From positions 124,001-188,000 of IMG/VR virus record IMGVR_UViG_3300044997_001199: 64,000 nt of DNA; one strand, 5' to 3'. The first letter of the stretch is position 1. Every line of letters starts with the position of its first letter. The notes under the pieces are model-generated. The model was not told where the DNA came from. It ran no database searches and saw only the letters and a program-made list of their open reading frames with translations. Positions 14,319 to 30,782 of the stretch are shown here, one piece after another. A program made the position numbers and the translations under genes.

Positions 14319-14540
14319 TCAGACTGCCACGGCCTGTTTGATGGCCGAGCCAAACGCACGAGCTGCTGTGATCTGTGCGCGGATCAGCTCACATCCTGCG
14401 GCATTGATGTTTTCGGCTGCGGTGCGTACACGTTCGTCGGTGATAAGACCAGCAAAGGTCTTGTTGTTTTTTTCCACAGCATCGATCACTGTGTTGACAT
14501 CAAACATCTTGGTAATATCAAACTTGGTATAATCAACCAT
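14319..14540 (-). CDS. Small amphipathic helical protein, phasin-like
   Basis: 73 aa, Ala-rich helical; strong SD; phasin resemblance is inference. Confidence 0.55.
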   Translation of the reverse strand: MVDYTKFDITKMFDVNTVIDAVEKNNKTFAGLITDERVRTAAENINAAGCELIRAQITAARAFGSAIKQAVAV

Positions 14541-14626
14541 TTCAGTCTCCTTAAAATTAAGCGAGGTTCACTACAACGAGACCTGCCCCATGCAGCATCT
14601 CATGCTGTCAGTGTAACAGTATTTAT
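14541..14626 (-). promoter_or_regulatory. Conserved leader copy A: late promoter + bulged-G hairpin + ROSE-like anti-SD
   Basis: ATAAATA..GAGAT-G-CTGC atggg GCAG-GTCTC..CTCGCTTAA tttt AAGGAG..ATG. Confidence 0.75.
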
Positions 14627-14648
14627 TGTGCAATGCAACAAATTAGAT

Positions 14649-15434
14649 TTATTTTGGAGAAATCAAATCTGCGGACTGTGTCCAAGTCACGATTTCCCAA
14701 CGACCGTCCCAGTGTTCTACCAAGGCAGTCATTGACTCAACCCAGTCGCCGTCGTTCATGTAGATTACACCATCAATTTCTTTGATTTCTGCGTTGTGTA
14801 TGTGCCCACAGATCACGCCGTCAAACCCTCGCTTTTTACAGTAGCCGGCAAGATTCTTTTCAAACTGAAAAATAAAATCTATAGATTTTTTAACTCGTGT
14901 TTTGAGATATTTGCTTAAACTCCAGTAACCCAGTCCTAGTCTGCGTCTAAGAGCATTGAATCTACTGTTTAAGTCTAGCACAAAATCATACATCTTGTCA
15001 CCTAAAAAGGACAACCACGGGGCTAAACGAGTGATTCCGTCAAAAAGATCTCCATGAGTGACCAGATAATGTTTTCCGTCTAAACCAATGTGCTCGGTCT
15101 GATTGAAAACTTCAATCATACCAAAACCAATACCGTATGGAATCAATGGGCGAAGAAACTCATCGTGATTGCCTGCTACATACACAACGCGGGTTCCACG
15201 CTTGGCATGTCCCATTATACGTCTTACAACATTGGTATGGCTTTGTTTCCAGCGCCACTTGTTTTGTTGAATTTTCCACGCATCAATGATGTCACCAACA
15301 AGATAAAGTGTTTCACAGGTATTATGTTTGAGAAAATTATTTAACTGCTCTGCTCTGCAGTCGCGGGTTCCAAGATGTACATCACTGATGAATATGGCGC
15401 GATAGGTGGTCACTAGGTATTTAACCCGGCGCAT
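14649..15434 (-). CDS. LpxH/YbbF-like metallophosphoesterase (UDP-2,3-diacylglucosamine hydrolase family)
   Basis: ISDVHLG; LVGDIID; AGNHDEFL; THGD; CGHIH; NDGDWVES. Confidence 0.88.
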   Translation of the reverse strand: MRRVKYLVTTYRAIFISDVHLGTRDCRAEQLNNFLKHNTCETLYLVGDIIDAWKIQQNKWRWKQSHTNVVRRIMGHAKRGTRVVYVAGNHDEFLRPLIPYGIGFGMIEVFNQTEHIGLDGKHYLVTHGDLFDGITRLAPWLSFLGDKMYDFVLDLNSRFNALRRRLGLGYWSLSKYLKTRVKKSIDFIFQFEKNLAGYCKKRGFDGVICGHIHNAEIKEIDGVIYMNDGDWVESMTALVEHWDGRWEIVTWTQSADLISPK

Positions 15435-15445
15435 TGTCCTGTTCT

Positions 15446-16216
15446 CTATGCACAATAACGTTCCAACGCAGCGTCGGTCTTGGTCATGTCTGCGCAGGTC
15501 CAGGTCTGGTAACTGTGTTTGAGATGCGGTGGCATGGGTATTTCTTTCACTGGAACACCAAAACTGTTGGCCACTTGACGGAAACTCAGCGTGGTACCGG
15601 TGCCAATGTTGAAAATACCACTTTCTGGTACGGCAAAAAATCGTTGATGACAGCGAACCACTTCTTCCACAGGCACAAAATCGCGCTGATAGGCATGGCT
15701 ATTTTCAAACACCGTGACCTCGCCGTGTTGCTCTGCCTGCAGGCGGAACTGTGTGAACGGACTGGCCTGCGACCCTTTGTGCTCTTCGCCGGACCCATAC
15801 ACATTGAAATATCGGAATCCTTGTACATGGATGTTGGGTGCAGGATCGCATTCGATGTGCCGCTCCACGATGTATTTGGTCCATGCATAGGGAGTGCGTG
15901 GATCGGGCGGAGCAGTTTCTGAAAAATTGGTCCCCGGTCCATACACACTGGCCGATGATGCCCATTGGAGATTTACACCATGCTTGCGACACTGATTGTA
16001 TAACCACAGTGTGAAATCCACATTCTGTCGCATGATCTGTTCCACATCAGCAAAGGTAGTGCTGGAAATGGCACCCACATGTATGACCCAATCCAGACCG
16101 GCCACTGTGGGCAAGGGTTCTCCCCATTCAAAGGTCGACACGTCGTGGCTCGAGCTCAATGCAGCGACAAGATGCGAGCCTATGAATCCTCGATGACCGG
16201 TAACCAAGATTTTCAC
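15446..16216 (-). CDS. NAD-dependent epimerase, HldD/RfaD (ADP-heptose 6-epimerase)-like
   Basis: TGHRGFIGS; HVGAISST; ASSASVYG; YAWTK; RYFNVYG..EEHKG.QAS; RDFV. Confidence 0.85.
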   Translation of the reverse strand: MKILVTGHRGFIGSHLVAALSSSHDVSTFEWGEPLPTVAGLDWVIHVGAISSTTFADVEQIMRQNVDFTLWLYNQCRKHGVNLQWASSASVYGPGTNFSETAPPDPRTPYAWTKYIVERHIECDPAPNIHVQGFRYFNVYGSGEEHKGSQASPFTQFRLQAEQHGEVTVFENSHAYQRDFVPVEEVVRCHQRFFAVPESGIFNIGTGTTLSFRQVANSFGVPVKEIPMPPHLKHSYQTWTCADMTKTDAALERYCA

Positions 16217-17244
16217 GATGTCACTGCCTCCCGTAAGTTAGACACAAAACCATCACGTGCGAGATTTTTGCCCTTGGCTTCGCACTGGATGTCGAATTCA
16301 TCGCTGAACGTGCCGGCCCAGGCATTCACGGCGTGATTCCAATAGAAATCTGAATGAGCTCGGAGTTTCTGCTTGTGGAATCCTCGCTCCAGCAGCCCGG
16401 CAAGATCAGGGCGGGTGTGGATATCATGCCCCACCAATAGGTCTTCTCGACTAACGCTATAGTGAACTACAGGGCGAACACCACGCCAAGACTCAATGAC
16501 GTGCTGCGTCCTAGGGTCTTTGGGCTCAATATATTCGCCGGTGCGCACCCAATGGTGATGAATGTCCAACACAAGGGCCACATGATCAGCCACAAGCAAA
16601 GTAAGGTCCAGACCATTTGAAATTTCGTCGTTCTCAATGGTGATTAGATTCCGGGCCTCGGGGCTGAGACGCCCCAGAGTACGAAGGAATTTGTCAGGCC
16701 CACCTTTGCCCGACAAATGCACATTGATCTTGAATCCTGAATCATGCCACGCGGCACCATAACCCATCCAGCGCGCCATGTCTGCATGATATTCAAATTC
16801 ATCAATGCTTCTATTTACAATATCGTCGTTCTCTGATGCAAGAACACAGAACTGTCCAGGATGGAAACTCAGTCTCACGCCCAGTTCACGCGCACGGTCG
16901 CCAATGGGTTGGAATATGGTCTCAAGGTGGTGCTGAATGTCGGCCTGCTGCCACCAGTCCTGCCAGGACGCCTCGGTGTAGCCCTGCAACATTTCAGACC
17001 CAAGACGCACCATGCGGAATTCTGGCTGCAGTGAGCCCACACATTCTACCATGCGCAGAGCTGCTGCGGCATTGTGATTCATGATGTCCCACTGGCGTTG
17101 CTCGGCTAGATCTGCATGCTCGCGCAGCCAACGCATGGTAGTGGAGCGACCATTGAGTTCACGATTGGCGGCATTGACCTTCATGCCGCCACATTCAGCA
17201 GGATCTTCCAACCACTTGCAACAAAACCCAAAACGTCCTGTCAT
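16213..17244 (-). CDS. uvsE: UV damage endonuclease
   Basis: GFCCK; RLSFHPGQF.VLAS; INVH; LITIENDE; VLDIHHHW; P.VHYS; AHSD; CEAKGK. Confidence 0.93.
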   Translation of the reverse strand: MTGRFGFCCKWLEDPAECGGMKVNAANRELNGRSTTMRWLREHADLAEQRQWDIMNHNAAAALRMVECVGSLQPEFRMVRLGSEMLQGYTEASWQDWWQQADIQHHLETIFQPIGDRARELGVRLSFHPGQFCVLASENDDIVNRSIDEFEYHADMARWMGYGAAWHDSGFKINVHLSGKGGPDKFLRTLGRLSPEARNLITIENDEISNGLDLTLLVADHVALVLDIHHHWVRTGEYIEPKDPRTQHVIESWRGVRPVVHYSVSREDLLVGHDIHTRPDLAGLLERGFHKQKLRAHSDFYWNHAVNAWAGTFSDEFDIQCEAKGKNLARDGFVSNLREAVTS

Positions 17245-17489
17245 TGACTACCCCATCGAAGTTGAAACCATACCGCATGTTCCTGTTCGCAAAACCAAAC
17301 CAATTTTTTCATAGAACCATCTACCAAGTCAAACGTTTCAACATAGGGTATGTTGTTGTTGAACAGCCAAACAAAGGCCGGTACGGAAATGCCGGTTATT
17401 TCCACACTGTGGCGATAGTCATCTGCATTATATATGCACTGTAGTTGGCGTCTATGCTTCACGCGGCACTGTCTTTGGTCAGAGCACAC
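17241..17489 (-). CDS. Small hypothetical protein (start uncertain)
   Basis: C-terminal ...F-EQEHAVWFQLRW motif typical of small phage proteins; stop overlaps uvsE start. Confidence 0.5.
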   Translation of the reverse strand: MCSDQRQCRVKHRRQLQCIYNADDYRHSVEITGISVPAFVWLFNNNIPYVETFDLVDGSMKKLVWFCEQEHAVWFQLRWGSQ

Positions 17490-17920
17490 ACGGTTTGAGA
17501 ATGTTCCTATGCCAAGCGTACTGACTCGTGTTGCATGAGTTTATTGGCTTCCTGTCGCATGGCCTGCACCCCAGATTCAGCAATGTCACGGATGCTAGCA
17601 CGAGGCAACGTGCGAACACGGTCTCCCATACCTCAATGAGATTGAGCCGGACGTTGAGTTCAGACTGCGGCATCTCACGACCATCGGGCGGCTTCACTGC
17701 GCCGGCCTCTGCCAGAGCCTGGCAGATAGCATCTTCGGCCACACGGCCAGCAGCAATCATGGCAGCATAGTTTGGATCAATACAGTGCCTGCGACTCTGC
17801 CCCACCCGGGTAGCACATGACCAGGTGTGTGCCTTGGGGAAATGAGTCAAGCAGTTCTTGGTCATATTCATTGACAGGTACATATCTGCGTCCTCTCTTG
17901 CGATAAAACGTTTCTTTCAT
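17459..17920 (-). pseudogene. Conserved phage gene with two frameshifts and a nonsense codon
   Basis: MKETFY...CYPGG | QSRRHCIDPNYAAMIAAGRVAEDAI...EVW | DRVRTLPRASIRDIAESGVQAMRQEANKLMQHESVRLA*EHSQTVCALTKD across three frames. Confidence 0.7.
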
Positions 17921-18615
17921 GCTAGATCTCGCAACAGTTGCCAGGTGTGGCGCCAGTCTCTGACAGCATAACACTGGCCGCGTGCCTGGTCAACGATGGC
18001 GTCAGCCAAGGGTCGATCGTTGCCCATGGCATCTATGCGATCGCCAAAAAACGCTACGTCGTCGGAGATCCAGCGCAAGACCTGTGACTTGTCGGTTCCG
18101 CGGCGGAAGATGTCGATAGAGATTTCGCCGCCCACCACGGCGTGTACGTCGGGCCAGCCGCGATTGATTTCCTGTGCAATGACAGCACGCTCACCGTGCA
18201 ATTGATCCCAACGATAGTAGTGGTCTCGATCCCAGGCCGTGGCACGACGTCCTACCACGCTGAAATTCAGCATGCCTGTGCGCTGTTCAAAGTGTAGGCC
18301 AGTACGGTGTCGATAGCCGCTGACACGTAAACGATTTTCTAGCCACGACCTGAGATCTCGGGGACACTGCCATTCGCTCTGGTGCACCAGTTGTCCCGCA
18401 CGATACACTGCATTGCCCGAACAGTTGAAACTGGTGTCCACGGTGTTCATGACCGCCTGGCCCAGCTGTTCCAGGGTCTTGCTATAGTCGCTGCCAGTGA
18501 CCAGACTCACGGTGTGTGCTCGACAAAACTCTCGAAACCAACCGCCAAATGCAGTGTCAATCACACCACGGCTGGGAGTAAGTGTGCCGTCAACATCAAA
18601 TAGATAGTGTGTCAT
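17917..18615 (-). CDS. Eukaryote-type phosphomannomutase (HAD IIB)
   Basis: LFDVDGTLTPSR; VTGSD; EQRTGMLNFSVVGR; GGEISIDIF; FFGD....GND. Confidence 0.88.
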   Translation of the reverse strand: MTHYLFDVDGTLTPSRGVIDTAFGGWFREFCRAHTVSLVTGSDYSKTLEQLGQAVMNTVDTSFNCSGNAVYRAGQLVHQSEWQCPRDLRSWLENRLRVSGYRHRTGLHFEQRTGMLNFSVVGRRATAWDRDHYYRWDQLHGERAVIAQEINRGWPDVHAVVGGEISIDIFRRGTDKSQVLRWISDDVAFFGDRIDAMGNDRPLADAIVDQARGQCYAVRDWRHTWQLLRDLA

Positions 18616-18638
18616 TGGTATCATTAATTCTTAGATAA

Positions 18639-18776
18639 CAATCTTTTTCCCTTTTATTTTACAGCGAAAAAACATTCAGGTCAATGGTTTGTTTTCAACC
18701 ATTTGTAATCTATGGTCAACAAAATGCCAACCGTCACTTGAAAGAAATAGGTTACAAGACTTACAACGATATATGA
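18639..18776 (+). pseudogene. Remnant of a GT10-like (SEKT/TEK motif) gene
   Basis: LFYSEKTFRSMVCFQPFVIYGQQNANRHLKEIGYKTY* aligns by eye with HLTEKTLRPIACGKPFLLAATPYSLRYLRSYGFLTF in 22226..23557. Confidence 0.65.
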
Positions 18777-18857
18777 ATTACAAACAGAACTGATTAAAGA
18801 TCTAAAAGAAAAACCAAAACAAAACAATCAGAGCCCGATATTAGGATTCGAATATTT

Positions 18858-18931
18858 TGGTAGGCCCGAAGGGTAACGCTCCCTCTTCTACGGTTTAAAA
18901 GACCGTTGCTTCACTTTAAAGCTTCAAGCCC
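18858..18931 (-). tRNA. trnK: tRNA-Lys(UUU), non-canonical D and T loops, encoded CCA
   Basis: GGGCTTG-AA-GCTT TAAAGTG AAGC-A-ACGGT CTTTTAA ACCGT-AGAA-GAGGG AGCGTTA CCCTT-CGGGCCT-A-CCA folds as a cloverleaf. Confidence 0.88.
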
Positions 18932-18943
18932 ATCAAACATCGA

Positions 18944-19021
18944 TCAGGCCAAGGTCCAGTATGCCACGATGGCTATTACATAGATTACTACTGCATAAAC
19001 AATCTGTCTAGCGATATTCAT
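18944..19021 (-). CDS. 25-aa hydrophobic peptide
   Basis: GGAG SD, own promoter; MNIARQIVYAVVIYVIAIVAYWTLA*. Confidence 0.6.
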   Translation of the reverse strand: MNIARQIVYAVVIYVIAIVAYWTLA

Positions 19022-19044
19022 TGTTCACTCCTACCTGTGTTGCT

Positions 19045-19073
19045 ATTGTATGGCAGGTAGAATTTGCAGTCAA
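19045..19073 (-). promoter_or_regulatory. sigma70-type promoter TTGACT-17-TACAAT driving peptide + tRNA-Lys
   Basis: Direct reading. Confidence 0.8.
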
Positions 19074-19089
19074 CTATTTCTAGACACAG

Positions 19090-19299
19090 TCATGTAAACC
19101 GCAAAGCGAATACCGTGGCGTCTTGACTGGTCTTGAAGTAAAACACTGTGCGGTCATAGTAGTAAACCGGATACCACTGACCTGCGAAAACTCCCAGGTT
19201 TTGTGCAAGCCATTGTTCTTGATGGTATGTGCCCATGTCAGACTCTTTGAGGTTTACAGTGACACTGTAGGGCCAACGTTCTTTATTCAGGGTTTTCAT
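19090..19299 (-). CDS. Small hypothetical protein
   Basis: ...FYFKTSQDATVFALRF motif of small phage proteins. Confidence 0.65.
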   Translation of the reverse strand: MKTLNKERWPYSVTVNLKESDMGTYHQEQWLAQNLGVFAGQWYPVYYYDRTVFYFKTSQDATVFALRFT

Positions 19300-19570
19300 G
19301 TCTACCTCATAGCGAATAACACACGTTGCTTTTCGTCACGCACACGCCATACGTCATAACGAAGTAACTATGATTGCTCTGTTTGACATATACTATATGT
19401 TCAAGCGTTGGCAAGATCAAGGTTGGGAAATGTCAACTGCTCGCGATGAAAAGACTGGCAAGTATGCCACGGGCCTTGACCAAGAACGACCACTCCGTTA
19501 CGTTAAAGGCTTAATTTATAGCTCTCACAGAGCCGTTGACAATTTTGTTAACGGCTGTGACAGTTAGTGG

Positions 19571-20488
19571 TTAACCTTGTCGGTGCAGATCCAGGGTCAC
19601 ACAGTGGAAACCACCACCCAGGGTGCGGCTGTGTCGCAGTTCCATAGGAATGACATCAAGACCCTGCGCCTGTATCTGTTGTATCAAGTCGATCTGCATG
19701 TGATCCACGATCACAGTGTTGGGATCCACGGTGAGAGTGTTCATGCCGATCCATTTTGATGCATAGGGATATTGGTAAAAATCACGGGGCACACAGTCTT
19801 CCACCCAGATTTTGTCCCAGGATTTCAATACAGGAGGCAAGTTGTGTTCTGTGACTCTCGATGCATTGAGCAAGACCAGTCCTTCACGCAACGGACAGAT
19901 GGTCGAATCTATGTGTACCCCTGCATAGAAATCGCAGAGGTGTATGCGTATCTGTGGAAACTGTTCGCAAAGCCAATGATAGGCGGCCATGTTGCCGCTA
20001 GCACTGCGCAAAAACAACCAATGATCATTGAGACGACACACATTGGCTGCATCCAAGATCATACCTTGATCTCTGGGCATGATCCGAGTGCTGATCCCGG
20101 GTTGTGTCAAGAAGTCAAGACTCTGTATTTCCTGATCCCGACAAGGGTACATCATGGCAGTATCGACCACGACATCGCCTGCTATGATCACCCGGTCCCG
20201 TGGACAGTAGTTGTACATGCCCTGTGTGATCACAAAGTCTTTGTAGGCCGGACGTAGGACTTCGACGCCGGCATCAGTCAGCACAGCGATCAAGCGTTCG
20301 AGATCCTCCTCGGCTTCCATCTGAATCCACTCGGGTACCGGTCCAGACGGCGGCGGCGTCTGGGTCCAGGAAGTTTTGCTGGACTCCTGTGCAAACATCG
20401 GATCCTCTGCGGGCCAGTTGGCCCCCGAGGCTGATCCTACCACCACGGTGCGCAGGCGGTCCCATTCATTGTGGCTGTGTATTTTCAT
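19571..20488 (-). CDS. Amidinotransferase (glycine / inosamine-phosphate amidinotransferase family)
   Basis: HSHNEWD.L..VVVG; YNYCPRD; DAAN; HIDS; N.L.VDP; LGGGFHCVTLD. Confidence 0.92.
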   Translation of the reverse strand: MKIHSHNEWDRLRTVVVGSASGANWPAEDPMFAQESSKTSWTQTPPPSGPVPEWIQMEAEEDLERLIAVLTDAGVEVLRPAYKDFVITQGMYNYCPRDRVIIAGDVVVDTAMMYPCRDQEIQSLDFLTQPGISTRIMPRDQGMILDAANVCRLNDHWLFLRSASGNMAAYHWLCEQFPQIRIHLCDFYAGVHIDSTICPLREGLVLLNASRVTEHNLPPVLKSWDKIWVEDCVPRDFYQYPYASKWIGMNTLTVDPNTVIVDHMQIDLIQQIQAQGLDVIPMELRHSRTLGGGFHCVTLDLHRQG

Positions 20489-21018
20489 TGTATGCCGGTA
20501 ATCTGTAGAGTGTATCGATCGGTCTGACCCACATTGGCAGCAAGATGAGGCACTGTGTTTTGCCAGACCACGGTATCGCCGGCCTGCCATTTGGTATAGG
20601 GGTGACCGTCGATTTCAAAATAATGACCGCTGGCCCAGGGTTCCAGGAAAATCACGGCTCGCCATATACGATCGGGGTCTGTGATGCCATGTATGTCGCG
20701 GAATCGTGCATAGGTGTCGCTGTGTGCGGGCAGCACTGTGCCTGGGCACATGCGATATACGGACCAGGAAAAACACTGCCAGTCAAACTGCTGCTGTACG
20801 GCTGGCATCCATTCGGGCTGACTCTGACGCATGTCATACATGTCGCCTGTGAATCGAGTCTGGGTATAACCCAGACTTCGCCACAATTTAACCGATTCGG
20901 AATCATTGAATGGCTCGTTGCAGTAAGGCAGATCGCGATGATCTGTCCAGACCAACTCAGTGTGGGTGTAGTACCATTTAGGCACGACGAGTGTTACCGT
21001 AGTGTACCACCTTGACAT
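20485..21018 (-). CDS. 2OG-Fe(II) dioxygenase
   Basis: PAHSD (HxD), distal H in PHLAAN, RYTLQITG. Confidence 0.8.
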   Translation of the reverse strand: MSRWYTTVTLVVPKWYYTHTELVWTDHRDLPYCNEPFNDSESVKLWRSLGYTQTRFTGDMYDMRQSQPEWMPAVQQQFDWQCFSWSVYRMCPGTVLPAHSDTYARFRDIHGITDPDRIWRAVIFLEPWASGHYFEIDGHPYTKWQAGDTVVWQNTVPHLAANVGQTDRYTLQITGIQ

Positions 21019-22222
21019 TGGGCAGATCCAACGACAAACGGCGCCACGGGTCCACTATCACGGACTCTGCAGGAATGTCACAGTAGGGATTGGTGTCGTC
21101 TTGCTCACCGGTGTATTCATAGGTAATCTTACGGTTGTGCGCCCATAGTATCACAGCTGGCTCCCTGAGATCAGAGACCACGTCAGTGGGGTCATCGGCC
21201 ATGGGGTCCAGATACACCACAGCATGGCCTAGCTCTCTTACATAGTGACCCACCAGAGTAGAATAACTGCCAATACAGTATTCCACGTCGGGCTTGTAGG
21301 CCTTGCCGTGGATCACGATGGGTACATTACCCATGCGATTGGCATCGGCCTGATCTACCAAGAACTTGGCCAGATTGCGTGCCTGGATTTCGCGAGCGTG
21401 CATGATGGTGTCAAACAGGTCATAGCCGATGTCATACTCCTGCGCCAGCCAACGCAGAGCAATGTTGTCACGTGGATGGCAAGCGCCGGCATCGCCCATG
21501 CCTGCGGTCATGTATTTGGGACCCATGATGCGCATGGTTGAATTGGCCAGGGCGTCGGTGACCACGTCCACATTGATGTTTCCAATGCGCAGTGCAAAAT
21601 CCTGGATCATGTTGGCCAGACCTACTTTGGCTGAGATAAAGGTGTTGTAGAAAATCTTGATGGCTTCGCATTCGTCCCAGGTACCTGTGACATAGCGCGG
21701 ATCATTGACCATGAGTGCACGATAGATATCAATCAGATCTTGCATCTCGGCAGGGTCGCCGGATTCCGATCCGATCATGACCATTTCAGGATTGATCATG
21801 TCCCATTTTACCGAACCCATGGCAATGAGATAGGGATTGTAAAGGAACTGATGTTGTGGATCCAGCAAGGTAGCAAAATGGCGTCGCGTGGTTCCCGGCA
21901 GCACAGTGGAAATCAAGACCACTCGCTTGGGCAATGTGGCATAACGATTGACATTGTTCAGGGCCGCCTTCACTGCATCGTGTCCAAAGTCACGAGGTTC
22001 CATGTGGCTGCTGGGCACTGATCCGTCGTATCCTTCCTCGTGCGGAGTGGGAACTGCAATGAAAATCCAATCGCTGTCGCGCACGGTTTCTTCGATGCCG
22101 CAGACTTTTACTAGGTCGCTGGACCTCGGGTAAATATCATATCCACGCACAGTGTACTTTTCTGCAAATACCTCGGCACAATCCATGCCCAACTTGCCCA
22201 ACCCAATAAAACCAATGTTCAT
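20978..22222 (-). CDS. ugd: UDP-glucose/GDP-mannose dehydrogenase family
   Basis: GFIGLGKLG; IAVPTP; ISTVLPGT; EAIK.FYNTFIS.K; GACHPRD; G.AYKPD. Confidence 0.92.
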   Translation of the reverse strand: MNIGFIGLGKLGMDCAEVFAEKYTVRGYDIYPRSSDLVKVCGIEETVRDSDWIFIAVPTPHEEGYDGSVPSSHMEPRDFGHDAVKAALNNVNRYATLPKRVVLISTVLPGTTRRHFATLLDPQHQFLYNPYLIAMGSVKWDMINPEMVMIGSESGDPAEMQDLIDIYRALMVNDPRYVTGTWDECEAIKIFYNTFISAKVGLANMIQDFALRIGNINVDVVTDALANSTMRIMGPKYMTAGMGDAGACHPRDNIALRWLAQEYDIGYDLFDTIMHAREIQARNLAKFLVDQADANRMGNVPIVIHGKAYKPDVEYCIGSYSTLVGHYVRELGHAVVYLDPMADDPTDVVSDLREPAVILWAHNRKITYEYTGEQDDTNPYCDIPAESVIVDPWRRLSLDLPNVKVVHYGNTRRA

Positions 22223-22225
22223 CTG

Positions 22226-23557
22226 ATGAATATTCCGTTAGAAAGATTGTATCATTATGTCAGCGATATTGCTGGTCCTGATGTAATAATTTATCGTTGG
22301 TCCTCTCACGGATCAAAAATTCTCTACGATCTCAGAGCACTGACCGATATCCTGTCGGGATCTCAACTTCAGTTCTATAGTTCCGATTTGGTCCAACATG
22401 TCGCGATTATAGCACATGATCAGGAACCATTGGATCTTTTGTACTATGATCGACAACATATTTGCGAACACTTTGCCAGGATTTTCGGGCTGGATCCACA
22501 GACGCTGCTGCAGGATGGATCAACCGCCGACATAAAAGACATCGTGTACCTGCACTTGCGATCCGTACTACATCCCAGTGTTCACCGACCCATTTTGTTG
22601 CATTCAGAAGTCGGCGGCCGCCAACTCAAGATCTATCAGCAGCTGGGCTACATACCGGCCTACTGGTGGTGTCATGCCGTGTTGGCCAGAGATTGGTTTA
22701 GATATGCTCAGTGCGATCCACAGTTAAAGCACCGTCCGGCACAATGGCACAAAGATTTTTTAATCTACTGTAGATCCTGGACCGGAACCAGAAAATATCG
22801 CCTAGCATTTTTTGAGATGTTGGCCGATGAACAATTGTCGGACTACTGCCAGGCATCACTGGCCTCACATGATCAAGGATTTCACTATCTCGACATTGGT
22901 GTTCGCGACCCTGATCTAGCAGTGCAAAGAACCGATCTGGACCAGATATTCCGATCGTCTGGGATGGGTCCCGCGGCCAGTGCAGACTACGACAATCAGG
23001 ACTATGCTGCTGCAGCACTGGAAATAGTTTTAGAAACAGTGTTTGACGATGATCGCCAACATCTTACCGAAAAAACCCTGCGTCCCATTGCCTGCGGCAA
23101 ACCATTTTTGCTGGCTGCCACTCCCTATAGCTTGCGATATCTACGCAGTTATGGTTTTCTGACCTTTGCACCATTGATCGACGAAAGCTATGATGAGATC
23201 ACTGATACCAAACAACGTCTCCGGGCCTTGGTCAAAGAAATGCGACGCATTGCCAATTTATCAAGACAACAAAAACAGATCTTGTACCAAGAACTACATC
23301 AACGCGCACAGATCAATCAAAAACATTTTTTTTCTGAGGATTTTTATCAGCAAGTGACTCAAGAACTCAGTTGCAATGTCAAGACTGCCGTGGAACAATC
23401 GAGATCACAAGTGTCGCTGGCCTGGATCGAACAACGTCTGCGCGTGGCCAATCGGTGGAACGACCTTGGACTCTCAGAATGCCAGTCTCTCTATGCCTGG
23501 ACGGTGGCCAACATACAAGTTTCGAGATCAGGAACAGATACCAACCCATCCCATTGA
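22226..23557 (+). CDS. GT10-like putative glycosyltransferase
   Basis: EIVLETVF....HLTEKTLRPI..GKPF resembles the GT10 E-N/T-S...Y-x-TEK motif. Confidence 0.55.
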   Translation: MNIPLERLYHYVSDIAGPDVIIYRWSSHGSKILYDLRALTDILSGSQLQFYSSDLVQHVAIIAHDQEPLDLLYYDRQHICEHFARIFGLDPQTLLQDGSTADIKDIVYLHLRSVLHPSVHRPILLHSEVGGRQLKIYQQLGYIPAYWWCHAVLARDWFRYAQCDPQLKHRPAQWHKDFLIYCRSWTGTRKYRLAFFEMLADEQLSDYCQASLASHDQGFHYLDIGVRDPDLAVQRTDLDQIFRSSGMGPAASADYDNQDYAAAALEIVLETVFDDDRQHLTEKTLRPIACGKPFLLAATPYSLRYLRSYGFLTFAPLIDESYDEITDTKQRLRALVKEMRRIANLSRQQKQILYQELHQRAQINQKHFFSEDFYQQVTQELSCNVKTAVEQSRSQVSLAWIEQRLRVANRWNDLGLSECQSLYAWTVANIQVSRSGTDTNPSH

Positions 23558-23880
23558 CTGTTTTGGTTGGACTCTGTAGATTGTTGGTTGATACGTTGTA
23601 ACAATATTTCATAAAAACTGTCAACTTCTCCGTTCCATCGTCCGGCCAAGGATTCAATGGCACCACGGCAATAGTCCCAGTTGCCCTGACGATATTGTGT
23701 CATGAGATTGTGATGCAGATCGCGATAGGTGTCCAAGGTAACAAATTCTGTCAGCGGCACGTATTCTACCACACACCATGCTGTGGATCGGTGACCTTTT
23801 TTGTCTACAAAAGTGTCGAGTTCGAGCAAGGTATAACTGTCGGGTAATTGTGGTATTAGGTGCCCAAATATAATGTGCAT
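23491..23880 (-). CDS. Hypothetical protein resembling the C-terminal tail of class III adenylate cyclases
   Basis: LELDTF..K.G; YRQGNWD.C...I; Y..L.QRI; WDG. Confidence 0.5.
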   Translation of the reverse strand: MHIIFGHLIPQLPDSYTLLELDTFVDKKGHRSTAWCVVEYVPLTEFVTLDTYRDLHHNLMTQYRQGNWDYCRGAIESLAGRWNGEVDSFYEILLQRINQQSTESNQNSQWDGLVSVPDLETCMLATVQA

Positions 23881-23904
23881 GCGTTTTCCTTTTAAATAAG
23901 TGTT

Positions 23905-24696
23905 ATGCCACTTGCATTTGATTTGATTTCTGATTTACACGTTGAAACATGGTCCAAGATATTTAATTGGACTGGTCAGGCCACCAGTCCATTTTGTGTG
24001 GTAGTTGGAGATGTGGCGCAGGACCGCAATGTTTTGATAAAAACGTTAACACACCTTGGCAGTTGTTATCAAGCAGTTTTTTACATCGATGGCAATGACG
24101 AGCATCGTGACTATTACGACAATCTCAGTTCCAGTTACAATGACCTAGCCGCAAAACTCAAACCCGTACCCAATCTGGTGTATCTACAGAACAACGTAGT
24201 GGTAATCGAGGGAGTGGCCATCCTGGGTACCAACGGTTGGTGGGCCTTTAATTTTGATCTCAGTGTCGATTCGGGGTCGTCCGTAGAACTTTGGCAGGAC
24301 GAAACCGGACACGATCTTGCAGCTTCTCAATATATTTCGGCCATGGCCCAGAACGATGCCAACTATCTTGTTCGCAGCGTCAAGCGTTTGCAAAAACGCT
24401 ATGATGTCCGTCACATCGTGGTAGCTACACATACTGTGCCGGCGACGCAATTGCTTGCCCACGACATCGAGTTGAAATCAACTCCCAAACTCAACTGCAT
24501 GGGCAATCGATATCTCGAAGAAGCACTGGACTGCGATACCGAAAAAAAAATACATACCTGGTGCTTTGGACACTATCACAGACCGATAGATCAGATCTAT
24601 CGACAAATACGGTTTGTTAACAACTGTCGCGGAAAAGAGAAAACCGACTATGCCACGTCGGTTTTCTATCCCAAACGGATCGTGGTAGAAAACTAA
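23905..24696 (+). CDS. Calcineurin-like metallophosphoesterase
   Basis: ISDLH; VVGD; GNDEH; THTVP; WCFGHYH. Confidence 0.88.
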   Translation: MPLAFDLISDLHVETWSKIFNWTGQATSPFCVVVGDVAQDRNVLIKTLTHLGSCYQAVFYIDGNDEHRDYYDNLSSSYNDLAAKLKPVPNLVYLQNNVVVIEGVAILGTNGWWAFNFDLSVDSGSSVELWQDETGHDLAASQYISAMAQNDANYLVRSVKRLQKRYDVRHIVVATHTVPATQLLAHDIELKSTPKLNCMGNRYLEEALDCDTEKKIHTWCFGHYHRPIDQIYRQIRFVNNCRGKEKTDYATSVFYPKRIVVEN

Positions 24697-24998
24697 TCAG
24701 TGGATTCGGGTTCCAGTTTGATCTGCAAAGGGTAGCTCTGTTCTCTGGCACTGAGCGTGACTTCGATGCCTTTTTGTTCGGCAATCTCATAGGGCAACAC
24801 CGCGACCACGGCTGATCCAGACTCGTGAATGTCCAGAGTGATTTCTTTGGCTAGATTCACACTGTAATCAAAGTACTCTACTAGCGATTCAATCACAAAC
24901 TCCATGCTAGTGGCATTGTCATTGAGATAAATTACCCGATACATGGGGGGTTCAGTGACTTTTTCGTTGATACGAGTGCGGAATTCAATCTGTGACAT
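24693..24998 (-). CDS. clpS: ClpS adaptor
   Basis: EPPMYRVIYLND..TSMEFV...L...F; DIHESG.AVV; EIAEQK; YPL. Confidence 0.92.
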   Translation of the reverse strand: MSQIEFRTRINEKVTEPPMYRVIYLNDNATSMEFVIESLVEYFDYSVNLAKEITLDIHESGSAVVAVLPYEIAEQKGIEVTLSAREQSYPLQIKLEPESTD

Positions 24999-25014
24999 TT
25001 TATAATCCTTGTAT

Positions 25015-25045
25015 ATACAGTGGCGGACACTGTCCGCCACTGTAT
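25015..25045. repeat. Perfect 14-bp inverted repeat with 3-nt loop
   Basis: ATACAGTGGCGGAC-ACT-GTCCGCCACTGTAT. Confidence 0.9.
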
Positions 25046-25059
25046 TTAACAAAACACTG

Positions 25060-25497
25060 TCAAGAAGTGTAGGTAATTGCGATGCTCTTGGGTTTGGCCG
25101 ACTCAGGAACCAGGCGTTCCAATTGGATGGTCAAGATACCATCTCGGACCACCGCGGCCTTGATTTCAACATGGTCTGCCAGCATGAAACAACGAGAAAA
25201 CTTGCGAGTCGATATTCCCTTGTGCAAATATTCAACTCCGACCGATTCGGTTTTCTTTTCACCGGTCACTGTGAGTTCACCGTTGTGGAATGTGACATCA
25301 ATTTCGCCTTGACTGAATCCGGCCGCGGCCAGGCGGATTTCATAGGTTTCCTCTCCGGTCTTGACCACATCGTGCGGTGGATAGTTGCCAACCTGAGATG
25401 AATGCTCAAACTGGTCTAGGATACGGTCAAACAAACGATCCACGCCCACGGTGTGACGATAGAAAGGGGTCAAGTCTAATGCAGTAAGTTTTGTCAT
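25060..25497 (-). CDS. ibpA: Small heat shock protein Hsp20 (IbpA-like)
   Basis: VGVDRLFD; NYPPHDV; I.LA.AGF; L.VTG; YLHKGISTR.F.R.F.L; DGIL.I.L; P..I.I. Confidence 0.95.
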   Translation of the reverse strand: MTKLTALDLTPFYRHTVGVDRLFDRILDQFEHSSQVGNYPPHDVVKTGEETYEIRLAAAGFSQGEIDVTFHNGELTVTGEKKTESVGVEYLHKGISTRKFSRCFMLADHVEIKAAVVRDGILTIQLERLVPESAKPKSIAITYTS

Positions 25498-25565
25498 GAT
25501 AATCTCCTTTTAAGCAAGTATGACAACAGTAGACCCGGAAATCGGCATCTACTAGGATATTTATA
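25498..25565 (-). promoter_or_regulatory. Conserved leader copy B (hsp20)
   Basis: TATAAATA..TAGTAGAT-G-CCG atttc CGG-GTCTACTG..CTTGCTTAAAAGGAG..ATG. Confidence 0.8.
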
Positions 25566-27423
25566 CTACTTCCGTGAAGTCACTGTCAACCACAGTTTGC
25601 TCAGCAGCACCGCGTTGGCGTGCTTCGTGCAGTGCTGTGAGTTTTCCAGCGAGTTCTGTGAGTGCGGTTTTCATGGCTTCCACATCGTCTCCCTTGCCTG
25701 CGTTTTCGCAGTCAGTAAGCACCTGGAGGATTTCTGCATGTTGTTTGGACGTGAGATCACTTTCCAGTTCCTTGAGATCTGCTCTTGCCGAATGTGTCAT
25801 GCTGTCGATCTGATTGCGAGTTTCAATTAGCTCTCTCTGGCGGCGATCCACGTCAGCATTGGCCTCGGCGTCCTGCACCATCTTCTGGATCTCCTCCTCA
25901 GAGAGGCCCGAGTTGGCTCGGATGGTGATATTGTTCTTCTTGCCGGTGGCCCGGTCTTGAGCTGACACATGCATGATACCATTGGTATCGATATCCAGTG
26001 TGACTTCGATCTGTGGTATGCCGCGGCGCGCAGGTGCGATGCCTTCGAGATTGAACTCTCCTAACAATTTGTTGTATTGGAATAGTTCACGTTCGCCCTG
26101 CGCTACCTTGATGGTCACTGCGGGCTGATTGTCCTCGGCTGTGCTGAAAGTTTGACTGTGCTTGGCAGGAATAGTAGTGTTCTTGTTGATCAGCTTGGTA
26201 AACACTCCTCCCTGTGTTTCAATACCCAGACTCAGCGGAATCACGTCCAGCAGCAGCACATCTGTGCGATCGCCACTCAGCACTGCGCCCTGAATCGCAG
26301 CACCCACGGCCACTGCTTCGTCGGGGTTGACGTCCTTGCGCGGATCCCGACCGAAAAACGTCCGGACTGCCTCTTGCACCTTGGGCATGCGCGTCTGGCC
26401 ACCCACCAGTATCACATCGCTGATATCAGCAACAGCAATACCTGCATCTTTTACGGCCTGACGGCAGGGTTCGATAGAACGCTGGATAAGGTCCTCGACC
26501 ATGCCCTCAAACCGCGCACGAGTGATCTTTACCACCAGGTGCTTGGGGCCGGTCTGATCCATGGCGATATAGGGTTCGTTGACTTCGACCTGGGAACCAC
26601 TGCTCAGTTCGATTTTGGCACGTTCGGCTGCGGCCTTGATGCGCTGCAGAGCAATAGCATCTTTGGTAAGATCAATACCGGTTTGGTCGCGGAACTCGTT
26701 GCAGAGGAAGTCGATCAGGCGTTGGTCGAAGTCCTCACCGCCCAGGAATGTATCGCCATTGGTGGACAGAACTTCAAACTGATATTCGCCGTCGACGTCT
26801 GCGATCTCGATGATCGAGACGTCGAAGGTGCCGCCGCCGAGGTCATAGACGGCGATCTTGCGATCTCGCTGTTCGTTTTTGTCAAGTCCAAATGCCAAGG
26901 CTGCTGCAGTGGGCTCGTTGATGATGCGACGCACTTCTAGTCCAGCGATGCGGCCAGCGTCTTTGGTGGCCTGACGCTGCGCGTCGTTGAAGTAGGCCGG
27001 CACAGTGATCACGGCCTCGGTCACGGCATGTCCCAGATAATCCTCGGCAGCTTTCTTCATCTTACGTAACACTTCGGCCGAAATCTGCGGAGGGGCCTTG
27101 TTGTCGCCATTGACTGCGATCCATGCATCGCCGTTGTCGGCCCTCACAATATCGTAGGGCAGAGAGTTGATATCTCGTTGTACGGCCTTTTCTTCGAATC
27201 TTCGTCCGATCAGACGCTTGGCTGCATACACTGTGTTCTTGGGATTGGTAACAGCCTGGCGTTTAGCAGGTGCACCGACCAAGATTTCATCCGCGGTATA
27301 GGCCACAACAGAAGGAGTGGTTCTGGCTCCTTCGGCATTTTCGATAACTCTCGGGTTTCCATTTTCGATCACAGCCACGCAGGAATTGGTGGTGCCAAGA
27401 TCGATACCAATGATTTTGCTCAT
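25561..27423 (-). CDS. dnaK: Chaperone DnaK (Hsp70)
   Basis: [15 protein letters not shown]; [20 protein letters not shown]; [10 protein letters not shown]; LVGGQTRMP; full length. Confidence 0.99.
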
Positions 27424-27492
27424 AGTGTTCTCCTTGGTTAAGCAAGAATAAGTCGAGATCCCCGGAATGGGCAATCTCTAGTGCTATTTATA
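27424..27492 (-). promoter_or_regulatory. Conserved leader copy C (dnaK)
   Basis: TATAAATA..GAGATT-G-CCC attcc GGG-GATCTC..CTTGCTTAA cc AAGGAG..ATG. Confidence 0.8.
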
Positions 27493-27517
27493 GACAAAAT
27501 CTCAAATCAAGTCAAGC

Positions 27518-30421: not shown

Positions 30422-30782
30422 AGTACTCTATTTATTGCTCGTCCTTGAGCATCCATGTTTCAATCTCTGCTGTTCAGTACCCAACCCAACTGCCATGGAT
30501 CTTGGACAATGTTGTCTGTGACAGGTCCTTCGGTCACGTAGCTTGATATCTGGGAATCTGGTGTATTGTCGATCTTTTCTATTGAGTCTGTGCCCGAGCA
30601 ATACTAATCAATATAGTCGCCTTCGAGCCTTATGTCGTATACAATACCACCCGCATAGTGCCAGGAACACGATCAACGCCGATTACAGTTATAGCAGGAA
30701 ATACAGATCAGTGCAACCGTTGGCTGTGTGTGGTTGACTGTTTTGTGTCTGAGTCAGTTGACTCAGCGTTCATACCGTGGAT

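What the first reader, a model, noticed from the sequence alone, without database searches (positions are those of the whole stretch)
14541..27492. Three-copy structured leader (late promoter + bulged-G hairpin + ROSE-like anti-SD) defining a phage chaperone regulon
Upstream of dnaK (27424-27492), hsp20 (25498-25565) and the phasin-like gene (14541-14626) the same architecture recurs: (T)ATAAATA, then a hairpin AGAU-[bulged G]-3/4 bp-5-nt loop-GUCU/GAUCU with compensatory changes among copies (CCG/CGG, CCC/GGG, CUGC/GCAG), then CU(U/C)GCUUAA 0-4 nt before AAGGAG. U(U/C)GCU pairing over the SD with a bulged G is the hallmark of ROSE RNA thermometers, and the first hairpin recalls the PhotoRC-II motif of cyanophage psbA/hli/hsp20 leaders. 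Covariation is seen directly. Inference: this is a phage-encoded translational switch (thermometer or protein-binding operator) that co-regulates a full Hsp70, an sHSP and a small uncharacterised protein, implying the latter is a stress/chaperone factor.
Basis: partly seen in the sequence, partly recalled or inferred. Interest (0 to 1): 0.85.

Follow-up and report, generated by a model that had tools for sequence, protein, structure and literature searches.

The report
ROSE-like RNA thermometer leaders on phage chaperone genes
Three genes of this large phage (dnaK, an IbpA-type hsp20 and a small helical protein) carry the same two-hairpin 5' leader, a phage version of the bacterial ROSE-type RNA thermometer that hides the ribosome-binding site, and the same leader sits in front of chaperone genes in many other phages.

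Summary
All three leaders lie on the minus strand. Each has (T)ATAAATA, a bulged-G hairpin, CUYGCUUAA, AAGGAG and AUG.

A covariance model built only from other phages finds exactly these three sites in the 64 kb window.

The ROSE reading is right in substance. Rfam ROSE_3, the short Pseudomonas ibpA thermometer, matches two copies end to end. They score 36.6 and 35.7 bits against a gathering score of 43. The dnaK copy is missed. PhotoRC-II never matches, and the "phasin" label has no support.

The element is widespread:
- 70 of 80 phage loci chosen only by their Hsp20 protein carry it directly upstream. Most of the rest have a diverged form or sit behind a gene that carries it.
- Cultured phages such as S-PM2, P-SSM4 and HTVC008M have it.
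- Hairpin 1 covaries strongly.
- The same leader also precedes phage dnaK, groES-groEL, a rubredoxin-like gene and a family of small helical proteins.
- It also occurs in front of bacterial ibpA and some bacterial dnaK genes.

Most likely mechanism, inferred rather than tested: a stable 5' hairpin plus a weak hairpin that sequesters the Shine-Dalgarno sequence and opens on warming. The phage Hsp20 may also repress it; it keeps IbpA's RNA-binding Arg93 and Tyr34.

Verdict: a new variant of a known kind, of moderate interest.

The parts
27485..27492 (-). TATAAATA, T4-late-promoter-like box of the dnaK leader
   Evidence: Exact 8-mer. Hairpin 1 begins 6 nt downstream, so the transcript would start at the foot of the hairpin. 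This is inference; the transcription start site was not mapped.
27455..27478 (-). Hairpin 1 of the dnaK leader: 5-bp lower stem, bulged G, CCC/GGG upper stem, 5-nt loop
   Evidence: Read directly and folded. Best hit of the independent model R1, 31.5 bits, E 8e-7.
27430..27446 (-). Hairpin 2 of the dnaK leader: CUU-(G)-CUU / AAG-GAG, with anti-SD box 27438-27446 and SD AAGGAG 27430-27435
   Evidence: The isolated hairpin folds with the bulged G at 15 C (-4.9 kcal/mol) and is only -2.2 kcal/mol at 37 C.
25561..27423 (-). dnaK (Hsp70) coding sequence
   Evidence: Pfam HSP70, E 5e-250. 66-70% identical to the DnaK of other phage contigs.
25558..25565 (-). TATAAATA box of the hsp20 leader; it overlaps the dnaK stop codon
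25528..25553 (-). Hairpin 1 of the hsp20 leader: AGUAGAU / bulged G / CCG / AUUUC / CGG / GUCUACU
   Evidence: Rfam ROSE_3 35.7 bits. R1 26.6 bits.
25504..25518 (-). Hairpin 2 of the hsp20 leader: CUUGCUUAA immediately followed by AAGGAG
   Evidence: Very weak on its own (-0.7 kcal/mol at 37 C).
25492..25525 (-). Outer helix predicted in the hsp20 leader: UGUCAU (25520-25525) pairs with AUGACA (25492-25497), enclosing the SD and the start codon
   Evidence: Present in the MFE structure at 5-50 C. In related leaders an upstream GUCA box occurs with an AUGAC start in 37 of 38 cases. This co-occurrence is confounded by shared ancestry.
25060..25497 (-). hsp20, an IbpA-type small heat-shock protein
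   Evidence: Pfam HSP20, E 9e-20. 37% identical to E. coli IbpA in the alignment; keeps IbpA Y34, R93 and R97.
14620..14626 (-). ATAAATA box of the small-ORF leader (7 of 8 positions of TATAAATA)
14578..14601 (-). Hairpin 1 of the small-ORF leader: GAGAU / bulged G / CUGC / AUGGG / GCAG / GUCUC
   Evidence: z -2.5. Rfam ROSE_3 36.6 bits. In the orthologue, CUGC/GCAG is replaced by CCGC/GCGG.
14547..14565 (-). Hairpin 2 of the small-ORF leader: CUC-(G)-CUUA / UAAG-GAG, 7 bp with a bulged G, covering the whole SD
   Evidence: -4.7 kcal/mol at 37 C, -7.5 at 15 C.
14319..14540 (-). 73-aa protein, predicted alpha-helical hairpin, function unknown
   Evidence: No Pfam, PHROG or NCBIfam family. 29 proteins, nearly all of 60-90 aa, matched its profile among the representatives. 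AF2 pLDDT 85, two helices. No structural match. hhalign probability 89% to the small proteins that carry the same leader in other phages.

Best explanation
The three sequences are copies of one cis-acting 5'-UTR element. It is a phage variant of the two-hairpin 'short ROSE-like' RNA thermometer known from Pseudomonas ibpA (Rfam ROSE_3).

Proposed working:
- Transcription starts from a T4-late-type (T)ATAAATA box.
- The mRNA begins, at least for dnaK and hsp20, with a stable G+C-rich hairpin. Its core is nearly invariant: a Y-G pair, a bulged G, then two C-G pairs. This hairpin does not melt. It probably protects the 5' end and helps the second hairpin to fold.
- About 8-14 nt further on, the box CUYGCUU pairs with (A)AGGAG to form a marginally stable mini-hairpin with a bulged G. 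This occludes the Shine-Dalgarno sequence.
- Warming opens this hairpin and translation rises.
- The phage Hsp20 is IbpA-like and keeps the residues IbpA needs to bind its own leader. It probably adds a second layer: free Hsp20 represses all mRNAs carrying the leader, and titration of Hsp20 by aggregating proteins late in infection relieves the repression.

Shown here: the sequence architecture, the homology to ROSE_3, the covariation of hairpin 1, and the recurrence before chaperone genes.

Inferred: the transcription start, thermosensing, and Hsp20 binding.
For: - Rfam ROSE_3 matches the small-ORF leader (36.6 bits, E 1.1e-6) and the hsp20 leader (35.7 bits, E 1.7e-6) over model positions 1-69. 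Other phage copies score 24.7-39.6 bits. The bona fide E. coli ibpA thermometer scores only 20.8 bits on ROSE_3, and 100.4 on ROSE_2.
- The ROSE_3 consensus hairpin I (GAUGCCGAAgUCGGGUC) is nearly identical to hairpin 1 here.
- The published definition is met: two hairpins, SD in the 3' hairpin paired imperfectly with U(U/C)GCU, and a stable conserved hairpin I that does not melt (PMC3669281).
- An independent model finds exactly three copies in the window.
- 70 of 80 loci chosen only by Hsp20 protein have the element directly upstream. Eight of the other ten have a diverged form or follow a gene that carries it; one is cut off by the contig end and one was not examined.
- Hairpin 1 covariation: 98.5% of cells paired; 6 of 7 pairs changed on both sides; score 0.728 against 0.253 shuffled and at most 0.108 when slid. 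The pair next to the bulge is U-G in 53 sequences and C-G in 21, which fits RNA on this strand only.
- In the protein-selected set the bulged G of hairpin 1 is G in 75 of 77 sequences, and the anti-SD box is CUUGCUU in 66 of 82.
- A compensatory change in the orthologous small-ORF leader.
- Hairpin 2 stabilities of -0.7 to -4.7 kcal/mol at 37 C and -3.0 to -7.5 at 15 C are in the marginal range expected of a thermometer.
- The Hsp20 keeps IbpA Y34, R93 and R97. The R93 equivalent is at least 90% conserved in 37 phage Hsp20s. R93 is essential for IbpA binding to its 5' UTR and for self-repression (PMC10474464). IbpA also represses ibpB and rpoH mRNAs (PMC10410725).
Against: - All copies are below Rfam's gathering score for ROSE_3, and the dnaK copy gives no ROSE_3 hit at E<=10.
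- Hairpin 2 cannot be tested by covariation, because both strands are nearly invariant.
- Nearest-neighbour folding of the full leaders predicts only gradual opening of the SD between 5 and 50 C, and none for the small-ORF leader, where competing structures with the coding region appear.
- Hairpin 2 of the hsp20 leader is too short to be stable on its own.
- A phage has no obvious need for a temperature sensor within one infection cycle.
- IbpA residue K98 is Cys in the window's Hsp20.
- The element could have been carried over passively with genes captured from hosts, since SAR11-type ibpA and some bacterial dnaK genes have the same leader.
Confidence: 0.7

Rival explanations
1. The element is mainly a protein-binding operator. 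Oligomers of the phage IbpA-like Hsp20 bind the shared leader, perhaps through the invariant Y-G / bulged-G / CC-GG core of hairpin 1. They repress hsp20, dnaK and the small gene until aggregating proteins titrate Hsp20 away. Temperature plays little part. This overlaps with the best explanation rather than excluding it.
For: - E. coli, Cedecea and Vibrio IbpA repress translation through their own thermometer-type 5' UTRs. This needs R93 and an aromatic residue at position 34 (PMC10474464).
- The window's Hsp20 has both, plus R97. The R93 equivalent is at least 90% conserved in phage Hsp20s.
- The sequence core of hairpin 1 is conserved far beyond what a generic stabilising hairpin needs, and the ROSE_3 consensus shares it.
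- E. coli IbpA does not act on the E. coli dnaK 5' UTR, which lacks such a leader. Putting the leader on dnaK would bring dnaK under this control.
Against: - No binding data exist for any phage Hsp20.
- K98, needed as a positive charge in E. coli IbpA, is Cys here.
- Which part of the UTR IbpA recognises is not known from the papers read.
- The invariant anti-SD box with its bulged G is explained more simply by the thermometer mechanism, which has been shown experimentally for the Pseudomonas relatives.
Confidence: 0.35
2. The leader is a constitutive expression cassette. A 5'-terminal hairpin protects the mRNA from decay and a strong AAGGAG site drives high translation late in infection. There is no switch.
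For: - Hairpin 1 sits at the predicted 5' end behind the promoter box in two of the three copies.
- Krajewski et al. suggest that hairpin I may stabilise the ibpA mRNA.
- The predicted melting of SD pairing is shallow.
Against: This does not explain the near-invariant CUYGCUU box and its bulged G placed directly before the SD in phages and bacteria. It also does not explain why the cassette is restricted to chaperone-type genes rather than the other ATAAATA-driven genes of the window.
Confidence: 0.12
3. Hairpin 1 is related to the PhotoRC-II motif of cyanophage psbA/hli leaders, or the element is a new riboregulator unrelated to ROSE.
For: None found. The only link is that T4-like cyanophages also carry the element before hsp20.
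Against: No PhotoRC-II match at E<=10 in any of the three leaders or in a canonical copy. ROSE_3 is the only Rfam family that matches repeatedly.
Confidence: 0.02
4. The similarity of the three leaders is chance, or a non-functional remnant of duplication.
For: Three copies alone give little statistical power.
Against: - An independent model recovers exactly these three sites.
- More than 150 homologous copies show covariation.
- An orthologous copy shows a compensatory change.
Confidence: 0.01

Closest known systems
Short ROSE-like RNA thermometers of Pseudomonas ibpA (Rfam RF02523 ROSE_3; Krajewski et al. 2013, PMC3669281)
   Same: - Two hairpins in a leader of about 60 nt.
- A stable G+C-rich hairpin I with a 5'-side bulged G and a GCC...GGG core.
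- A short hairpin II in which U(U/C)GCU pairs imperfectly with the SD, leaving the AUG outside the hairpin.
- It sits in front of an IbpA-type small heat-shock gene.
- It is the best Rfam match and the only consistent one.
   Different: - Scores are 25-40 bits, below the gathering score of 43. The dnaK copy is not detected.
- Hairpin II is shorter (5-7 bp, 3-4-nt loop, box CUUGCUUAA) and lacks the flanking G-C clamps described for Pseudomonas.
- It is driven by a phage late-type or sigma-70-type promoter, not sigma-32.
- It is also used on dnaK, groES, a rubredoxin-like gene and a small helical protein.
E. coli ibpA/ibpB thermometers (Rfam RF01832 ROSE_2) and IbpA self-repression (PMC10474464, PMC10410725)
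   Same: - The hairpin next to the SD hairpin has the same plan: a 5-bp stem, a bulged G, 3 bp and a 5-nt loop.
- The ibpB leader has ACUCGCUU...AAGGAG.
- The sHSP keeps Y34, R93 and R97.
   Different: - No ROSE_2 match to any window leader.
- The E. coli ibpA UTR has more hairpins.
- In E. coli, dnaK is not under this control at the level of translation.
ROSE1 and relatives of Bradyrhizobium and other alpha-proteobacteria (Rfam RF00435)
   Same: The conserved U(U/C)GCU anti-SD with a bulged G (my own knowledge of the family).
   Different: Those have three to four hairpins and a much longer SD hairpin. They gave no Rfam match here.
ibpA leaders of SAR11, SAR86 and other marine proteobacteria, and two dnaK leaders on bacterial or MAG contigs (found here; I know of no description)
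   Same: The same two-hairpin leader with the exact CUUGCUUAA...AAGGAG box. L286 is a true chromosomal context, with rph, grpE and purC nearby.
   Different: - They lie behind a CCCATAT-type box that resembles the sigma-32 -10 element, not TATAAATA.
- The ibpA genes stand alone, not in a clpX-S21-dnaK-hsp20-clpS module.
- No hairpin 1 was detected upstream of the L286 dnaK box.

Membership tests
ROSE-like RNA thermometers (definition of Krajewski/Narberhaus, PMC3669281) | Lies in the 5' UTR of a small heat-shock gene | tested here: met
   Met for the hsp20 copy. The other two copies precede dnaK and an uncharacterised 73-aa gene, which goes beyond the classical target range.
ROSE-like RNA thermometers (definition of Krajewski/Narberhaus, PMC3669281) | Two to four hairpins, with the SD in the 3'-proximal one | tested here: met
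   RNAfold gives hairpin 1 in all three leaders. It gives an SD-containing hairpin 2 in the small-ORF and dnaK leaders. In the hsp20 leader the SD lies inside an outer helix.
ROSE-like RNA thermometers (definition of Krajewski/Narberhaus, PMC3669281) | Conserved U(U/C)GCU anti-SD motif next to the SD | tested here: met
   UUGCU (dnaK, hsp20) and UCGCU (small ORF), 5 to 9 nt before AGGAG. The heptamer is CUUGCUU in 66 of 82 protein-selected relatives.
ROSE-like RNA thermometers (definition of Krajewski/Narberhaus, PMC3669281) | Imperfect pairing over the SD, with a bulged G | tested here: inconclusive
   Predicted for the small-ORF hairpin at all temperatures and for the dnaK hairpin at 15 C. 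Not predicted for the hsp20 hairpin, where the spacer is too short. Both strands are invariant, so there is no covariation test.
ROSE-like RNA thermometers (definition of Krajewski/Narberhaus, PMC3669281) | Temperature-dependent melting of the SD hairpin and heat-induced translation | not testable with these tools
   Only nearest-neighbour predictions were possible, and they are not decisive.
Rfam RF02523 ROSE_3 | Score at or above the curated gathering threshold (43 bits) | tested here: not met
   36.6, 35.7 and no hit. No hit at the gathering score over the whole window. Phage relatives score 24.7-39.6.
Rfam RF02523 ROSE_3 | Full-length, structure-consistent alignment to the model | tested here: met
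   Model positions 1-69 aligned, with both helices formed, for the small-ORF and hsp20 leaders.
Rfam RF01832 ROSE_2 / RF00435 ROSE | Any match at E<=10 | tested here: not met
   None for the three leaders. The positive control, E. coli ibpA, gives ROSE_2 at 100.4 bits.
Rfam PhotoRC-II | Any match at E<=10 | tested here: not met
IbpA-type translational self-repression (PMC10474464) | sHSP with Arg at the IbpA-93 position and an aromatic residue at position 34 | tested here: met
   Alignment with E. coli IbpA shows Y34 as Y, R93 as R and R97 as R, but K98 as C. The R93 equivalent is nearly invariant in 37 phage Hsp20s.
IbpA-type translational self-repression (PMC10474464) | Binding of the sHSP to the leader RNA and repression of its translation | not testable with these tools
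   Needs purified protein and RNA.
T4-type late promoter | TATAAATA box a few bases upstream of the transcript start | tested here: inconclusive
   - The box matches 8 of 8 positions for dnaK and hsp20 and 7 of 8 for the small ORF.
- ATAAATA is enriched (11 found against 4.7 expected). Ten of the 11 lie just upstream of ORFs, including virion-structural-like genes.
- No start site was mapped, and no gp55/gp33 homologue was looked for.
Phasin (Pfam Phasin_2, NCBIfam phasin models), for the 73-aa protein | Significant match to a phasin profile | tested here: not met
   No match for the window protein. One of 29 relatives hits Phasin_2 at E 0.046, which is not significant.

The most novel reading that the evidence does not exclude
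The leader is the operator of a self-contained phage proteostasis regulon. The phage's own IbpA-like Hsp20 binds the invariant bulged-G core of hairpin 1. It represses translation of every mRNA that carries the leader: hsp20, dnaK and the small helical protein here, and groES-groEL and a rubredoxin-like gene in other phages. Hsp20 is titrated away when virion proteins begin to aggregate late in infection. The phage thus rebuilds the logic of the host heat-shock response without sigma-32, by placing an ibpA-type leader directly on dnaK. The small helical protein would then be an unrecognised member of the chaperone network.
Probability: 0.3. Interest if true: 0.75.

Novelty: new variant of a known kind. 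Interest (0 to 1): 0.55.

Why it matters
ROSE-type thermometers are textbook regulators of bacterial small heat-shock genes. I found no paper in the searchable library that describes them in phages.

Here the element turns out to be close to universal in front of phage IbpA-type hsp20. That includes model cyanophages and pelagiphages in which hsp20 is a widely noted auxiliary gene. It has also been recruited to dnaK, groES-groEL and an unknown small protein.

This has three consequences:
- It gives a concrete, testable handle on how phages time or tune their own chaperones.
- It supplies a large, diverse set of natural short thermometers, probably tuned to low temperature.
- It points to a conserved hairpin-1 core whose function is still unexplained even in bacteria.

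It also shows that Rfam's ROSE_3 model misses this large clade at its curated threshold.

Tried and rejected
- **PhotoRC-II and other Rfam families.** Nothing at the gathering score in the window or in 14 related loci except tRNA. Nothing at E<=10 except ROSE_3 and noise.
- **Close relatives among GenBank phages.** None by megablast.
- **MAFFT alignments of the leaders.** These did not keep hairpin 1 in register. I used a length-homogeneous seed and model-based realignment instead.
- **Locus search with a 37-sequence Hsp20 alignment.** An 8-sequence alignment worked.
- **Sigma-32 promoter or CIRCE reading of the hairpin region.** Considered from the sequence and dropped. The half-site resemblance in the dnaK leader has no partner, and the U-G pairs argue for RNA.
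- **Extended lower stem of the small-ORF hairpin 1.** Predicted, but not kept in the orthologue.
- **Phasin assignment of the 73-aa protein.** No support.
- **Fold of the 73-aa protein.** The helical-hairpin model has no significant PDB neighbour.
- **First profile comparisons of the small-protein groups.** These were weak, at 11% and 26% probability. Only the deeper profile reached 89%.
- **Thermodynamic melting curves.** Uninformative for deciding thermosensing.
- **Two distant homologues of the small protein (L331, L334/L335).** They lack the anti-SD box, so the association is not universal.

Full report
**What is there**

The genes in this part of the window run on the minus strand. Read on that strand, the three regions have the same order of parts.
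- A (T)ATAAATA box comes first.
- A hairpin follows. Its lower stem ends in a U-G pair, then comes a single bulged G, a 3-4 bp G+C upper stem and a 5-nt loop.
- An 8-14 nt spacer separates it from the box CUYGCUUAA.
- AAGGAG follows after 0-4 nt, and AUG 6 nt after that.

The upper stems differ in a paired way: CCG/CGG for hsp20, CCC/GGG for dnaK and CUGC/GCAG for the small ORF. The lower stems differ too: AGUAGAU/GUCUACU, GAGAU/AUCUC and GAGAU/GUCUC. RNAfold returns the bulged-G hairpin in all three. Exact coordinates are given in the parts list.

The dnaK start codon is the ATG at 27423. The mechanical ORF list extends the frame to a TTG at 27474, inside the leader.

**Is it more than chance?**

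YGCUUAA occurs five times in 64 kb, and three of these are these sites. TATAAATA occurs three times, and two are these sites.

The stronger test used independent data. I scanned IMG/VR for the anti-SD/SD string. In most of the 119 loci returned, the string was preceded by the same kind of hairpin. From 21 of those copies I built a covariance model, R1. It contained no window sequence, and only hairpin 1 was given as structure. Run with filters off over both strands of the window, its three best hits were exactly the three leaders: 31.5 bits (E 8e-7), 26.6 bits (E 2e-5) and 12.7 bits (E 0.14). The remaining hits matched only the Shine-Dalgarno part. So the window holds three copies and no more.

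**What family is it?**

At Rfam's gathering scores the window gives only a tRNA. Searched locally, the results were as follows.
- The small-ORF leader matches ROSE_3 (RF02523) at 36.6 bits, E 1.1e-6.
- The hsp20 leader matches ROSE_3 at 35.7 bits, E 1.7e-6.
- Both matches span model positions 1-69, with both helices aligned.
- A canonical phage copy scores 34.5 bits. Six further phage copies score 24.7-39.6 bits.
- All are below the curated 43 bits.
- The dnaK leader is not detected at E<=10, although it is the best hit of the phage-derived model.

As a control, the E. coli ibpA leader gives ROSE_2 at 100.4 bits and ROSE_3 at only 20.8 bits. The window's copies are therefore closer to ROSE_3 than a bona fide enterobacterial ROSE element is. 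PhotoRC-II never appears.

ROSE_3 is the short ROSE-like thermometer of Pseudomonas ibpA. Krajewski et al. describe its parts (PMC3669281).
- The UTR is about 60 nt long, with two hairpins.
- The SD sits in the second hairpin and pairs imperfectly with U(U/C)GCU.
- Hairpin I is conserved, G+C-rich and does not melt. Its role is unclear; it may stabilise the mRNA.
- Hairpin II alone confers heat induction.

The ROSE_3 consensus for hairpin I (GAUGCCGAAgUCGGGUC) is almost the sequence seen here.

**Comparative evidence**

To avoid selecting on the motif itself, I fetched 80 IMG/VR loci by Hsp20 protein similarity alone.
- R1 hits directly upstream of hsp20 in 70 of them.
- Of the other ten, one is cut off by the contig end.
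- In four, hsp20 is the second gene behind a small protein that carries the leader.
- In one (L179), hsp20 follows dnaK directly.
- Four have diverged versions, for example CUUACUU.

On this set hairpin 1 is paired in 98.5% of cells. Six of its seven pairs change on both sides (166 cells). The covariation score is 0.728, against 0.253 for shuffles and at most 0.108 for slid partners. One caveat applies: the alignment was fitted to the model.

The pair next to the bulge is U-G in 53 sequences and C-G in 21. This fits an RNA read from this strand and not a DNA site. The bulged G is G in 75 of 77 sequences, and the anti-SD heptamer is CUUGCUU in 66 of 82. Because both the SD and the anti-SD are fixed, hairpin 2 offers no covariation. 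Its support is homology to validated thermometers plus conserved complementarity.

The orthologous small-ORF leader in three related contigs differs by a compensatory U-A to C-G change in the upper stem.

Cultured phages also carry the element before hsp20: S-PM2, P-SSM4, HTVC008M, Melnitz, HTVC115P and C48C1. The E. coli ibpB leader has a related box.

**Which genes carry it**

The first ORF after each model hit was classified as follows.
- hsp20: 158 hits.
- dnaK: 16 hits.
- groES followed by groEL: 2 hits (confirmed by NCBIfam).
- A rubredoxin-like gene: 2 hits (weak NCBIfam match).
- Small proteins of 63-90 aa: 7 hits (L006, L115, L116, L184, L202, L203, L205).

The window's 73-aa protein has no Pfam, PHROG or NCBIfam family. 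Its profile finds 29 representatives, nearly all small proteins. That profile aligns with the other small proteins at hhalign probability 89%, E 2e-6, so they are probably one family. A 38%-identical member (L332) also carries the leader. Two others do not. AlphaFold gives a two-helix hairpin (pLDDT 85) with no significant PDB neighbour. 'Phasin-like' is therefore unsupported, but membership of a chaperone-linked regulon is supported by recurrence.

The module clpX - ribosomal protein S21 - dnaK - hsp20 - clpS of the window is common among these contigs.

**Bacterial counterparts**

The same string searched in one genome per species gave about 31 true copies among 120 rows.
- Most are stand-alone ibpA genes of Pelagibacteraceae, SAR86, other alpha-proteobacteria and Polynucleobacter. 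They lie behind a CCCATAT-type box that resembles the sigma-32 -10 element (my reading of the sequences).
- Two are dnaK genes. One lies in a plainly chromosomal context with rph, grpE and purC.

The element is therefore bacterial in origin. Its use on dnaK is not unique to phages. What phages changed is the promoter (TATAAATA or sigma-70-like), and they extended it to more genes.

**How it most likely works**

Shown: the architecture, the homology, the conservation and the target genes.

Inferred:
- Transcription starts a few bases after TATAAATA, so hairpin 1 is 5'-terminal for dnaK and hsp20. This does not hold for the small ORF, where 19 nt intervene.
- Hairpin 1 is a stable element that protects the 5' end or assists folding.
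- Hairpin 2 occludes the SD and opens with temperature.

The isolated hairpin-2 stabilities are marginal and stronger in the cold, as expected for hosts living in cool water: -4.7, -0.7 and -2.2 kcal/mol at 37 C, and -7.5, -3.0 and -4.9 at 15 C. In the hsp20 leader an outer helix, UGUCAU/AUGACA, encloses the SD and the start codon. Full-leader folding predicts only shallow melting, so computation cannot settle thermosensing.

A second layer is plausible. IbpA of E. coli and relatives binds its own thermometer-type UTR and represses translation. This needs R93 and an aromatic residue at position 34, and relief comes by titration onto aggregates (PMC10474464; PMC10410725). The window's Hsp20 has Y34, R93 and R97 but not K98, and the R93 equivalent is nearly invariant in phage Hsp20s. 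In E. coli, IbpA does not control dnaK translation; it acts through rpoH. A phage that puts the ibpA-type leader on dnaK would obtain that coupling directly.

**Verdict**

The PhotoRC-II and phasin suggestions are not.

The element is a phage-borne variant of a known family. It is missed by Rfam's curated threshold, and its target range is wider than the one described for bacteria. I found no description of it in the searchable literature. That library is incomplete, so this is not proof that it is new.

Noticed in passing
window 24693-28943 (-): A proteostasis module: clpX (27735-28943), ribosomal protein S21 (27518-27742), dnaK, hsp20 and clpS (24693-25052). tblastn finds clpX, S21 and clpS homologues flanking hsp20 (and dnaK where present) in many IMG/VR phage contigs (34, 56 and 97 loci hit, respectively).
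   Followed up: partly
window 18861-18931 (-): Rfam calls a tRNA here (41.8 bits), but ARAGORN reports no tRNA anywhere in the window.
   Followed up: no
window 14631-14640 (-); also L207-L209, L331, L332: The near-palindrome (G)TTGCATTGCA lies just upstream of the ATAAATA box of the small-protein gene. It is conserved in four divergent phage lineages. In some it sits inside a TTGATT...TATAAT-like promoter. It may be an operator or a promoter element.
   Followed up: no
window, 11 sites, e.g. 30429-30435, 42606-42612, 48795-48801, 55477-55483, 62598-62604: ATAAATA is enriched (11 found against 4.7 expected). Ten of the 11 sites lie directly upstream of ORFs. These include virion-structural-like proteins, a PAAR protein and a NifU-like Fe-S scaffold. 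This fits a T4-like late promoter motif.
   Followed up: partly
window 27415-27445 (-): In the dnaK leader the UUGCUUA box is also complementary to UGAGCAA, which covers the last two bases of the start codon and codons 2-3. This alternative 7-bp helix is the MFE when little coding sequence is included. Most phage dnaK genes with the leader start AUGAGCAAA.
   Followed up: partly
L201 947-1281, L165 895-1229, L019 2232-2427, L054 4046-4234: In other phage contigs the same leader drives groES-groEL operons and a small rubredoxin-like zinc-ribbon gene. In L019 and L054 the following hsp20 has only the hairpin-2 part, directly after the upstream stop codon, as in E. coli ibpB.
   Followed up: partly
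L227, L231, L276 and about 25 other genome loci; L286, L300: Chromosomal ibpA of Pelagibacteraceae, SAR86, Polynucleobacter and others carries the same two-hairpin leader behind a CCCATAT-type (sigma-32 -10-like) box. dnaK on two bacterial or MAG contigs is preceded by the same anti-SD/SD box. L286 has a plainly chromosomal context but no hairpin 1 was detected there; L300 has both hairpins.
   Followed up: partly
L136 1041-1459: A phage contig with the hsp20 leader encodes a tmRNA of the beta-proteobacterial or permuted type close to hsp20. This is a possible hint to the host.
   Followed up: no
window 30783-32201, 35449-38912, 20978-22222, 42167-42541: The window also encodes an ATP-dependent DNA ligase, both subunits of class I ribonucleotide reductase, a UDP-glucose dehydrogenase and a NifU-like protein. 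The small protein of the window occurs on contigs of up to 215 kb, so the source is probably a jumbo phage. It has no close relative among GenBank phages.
   Followed up: partly
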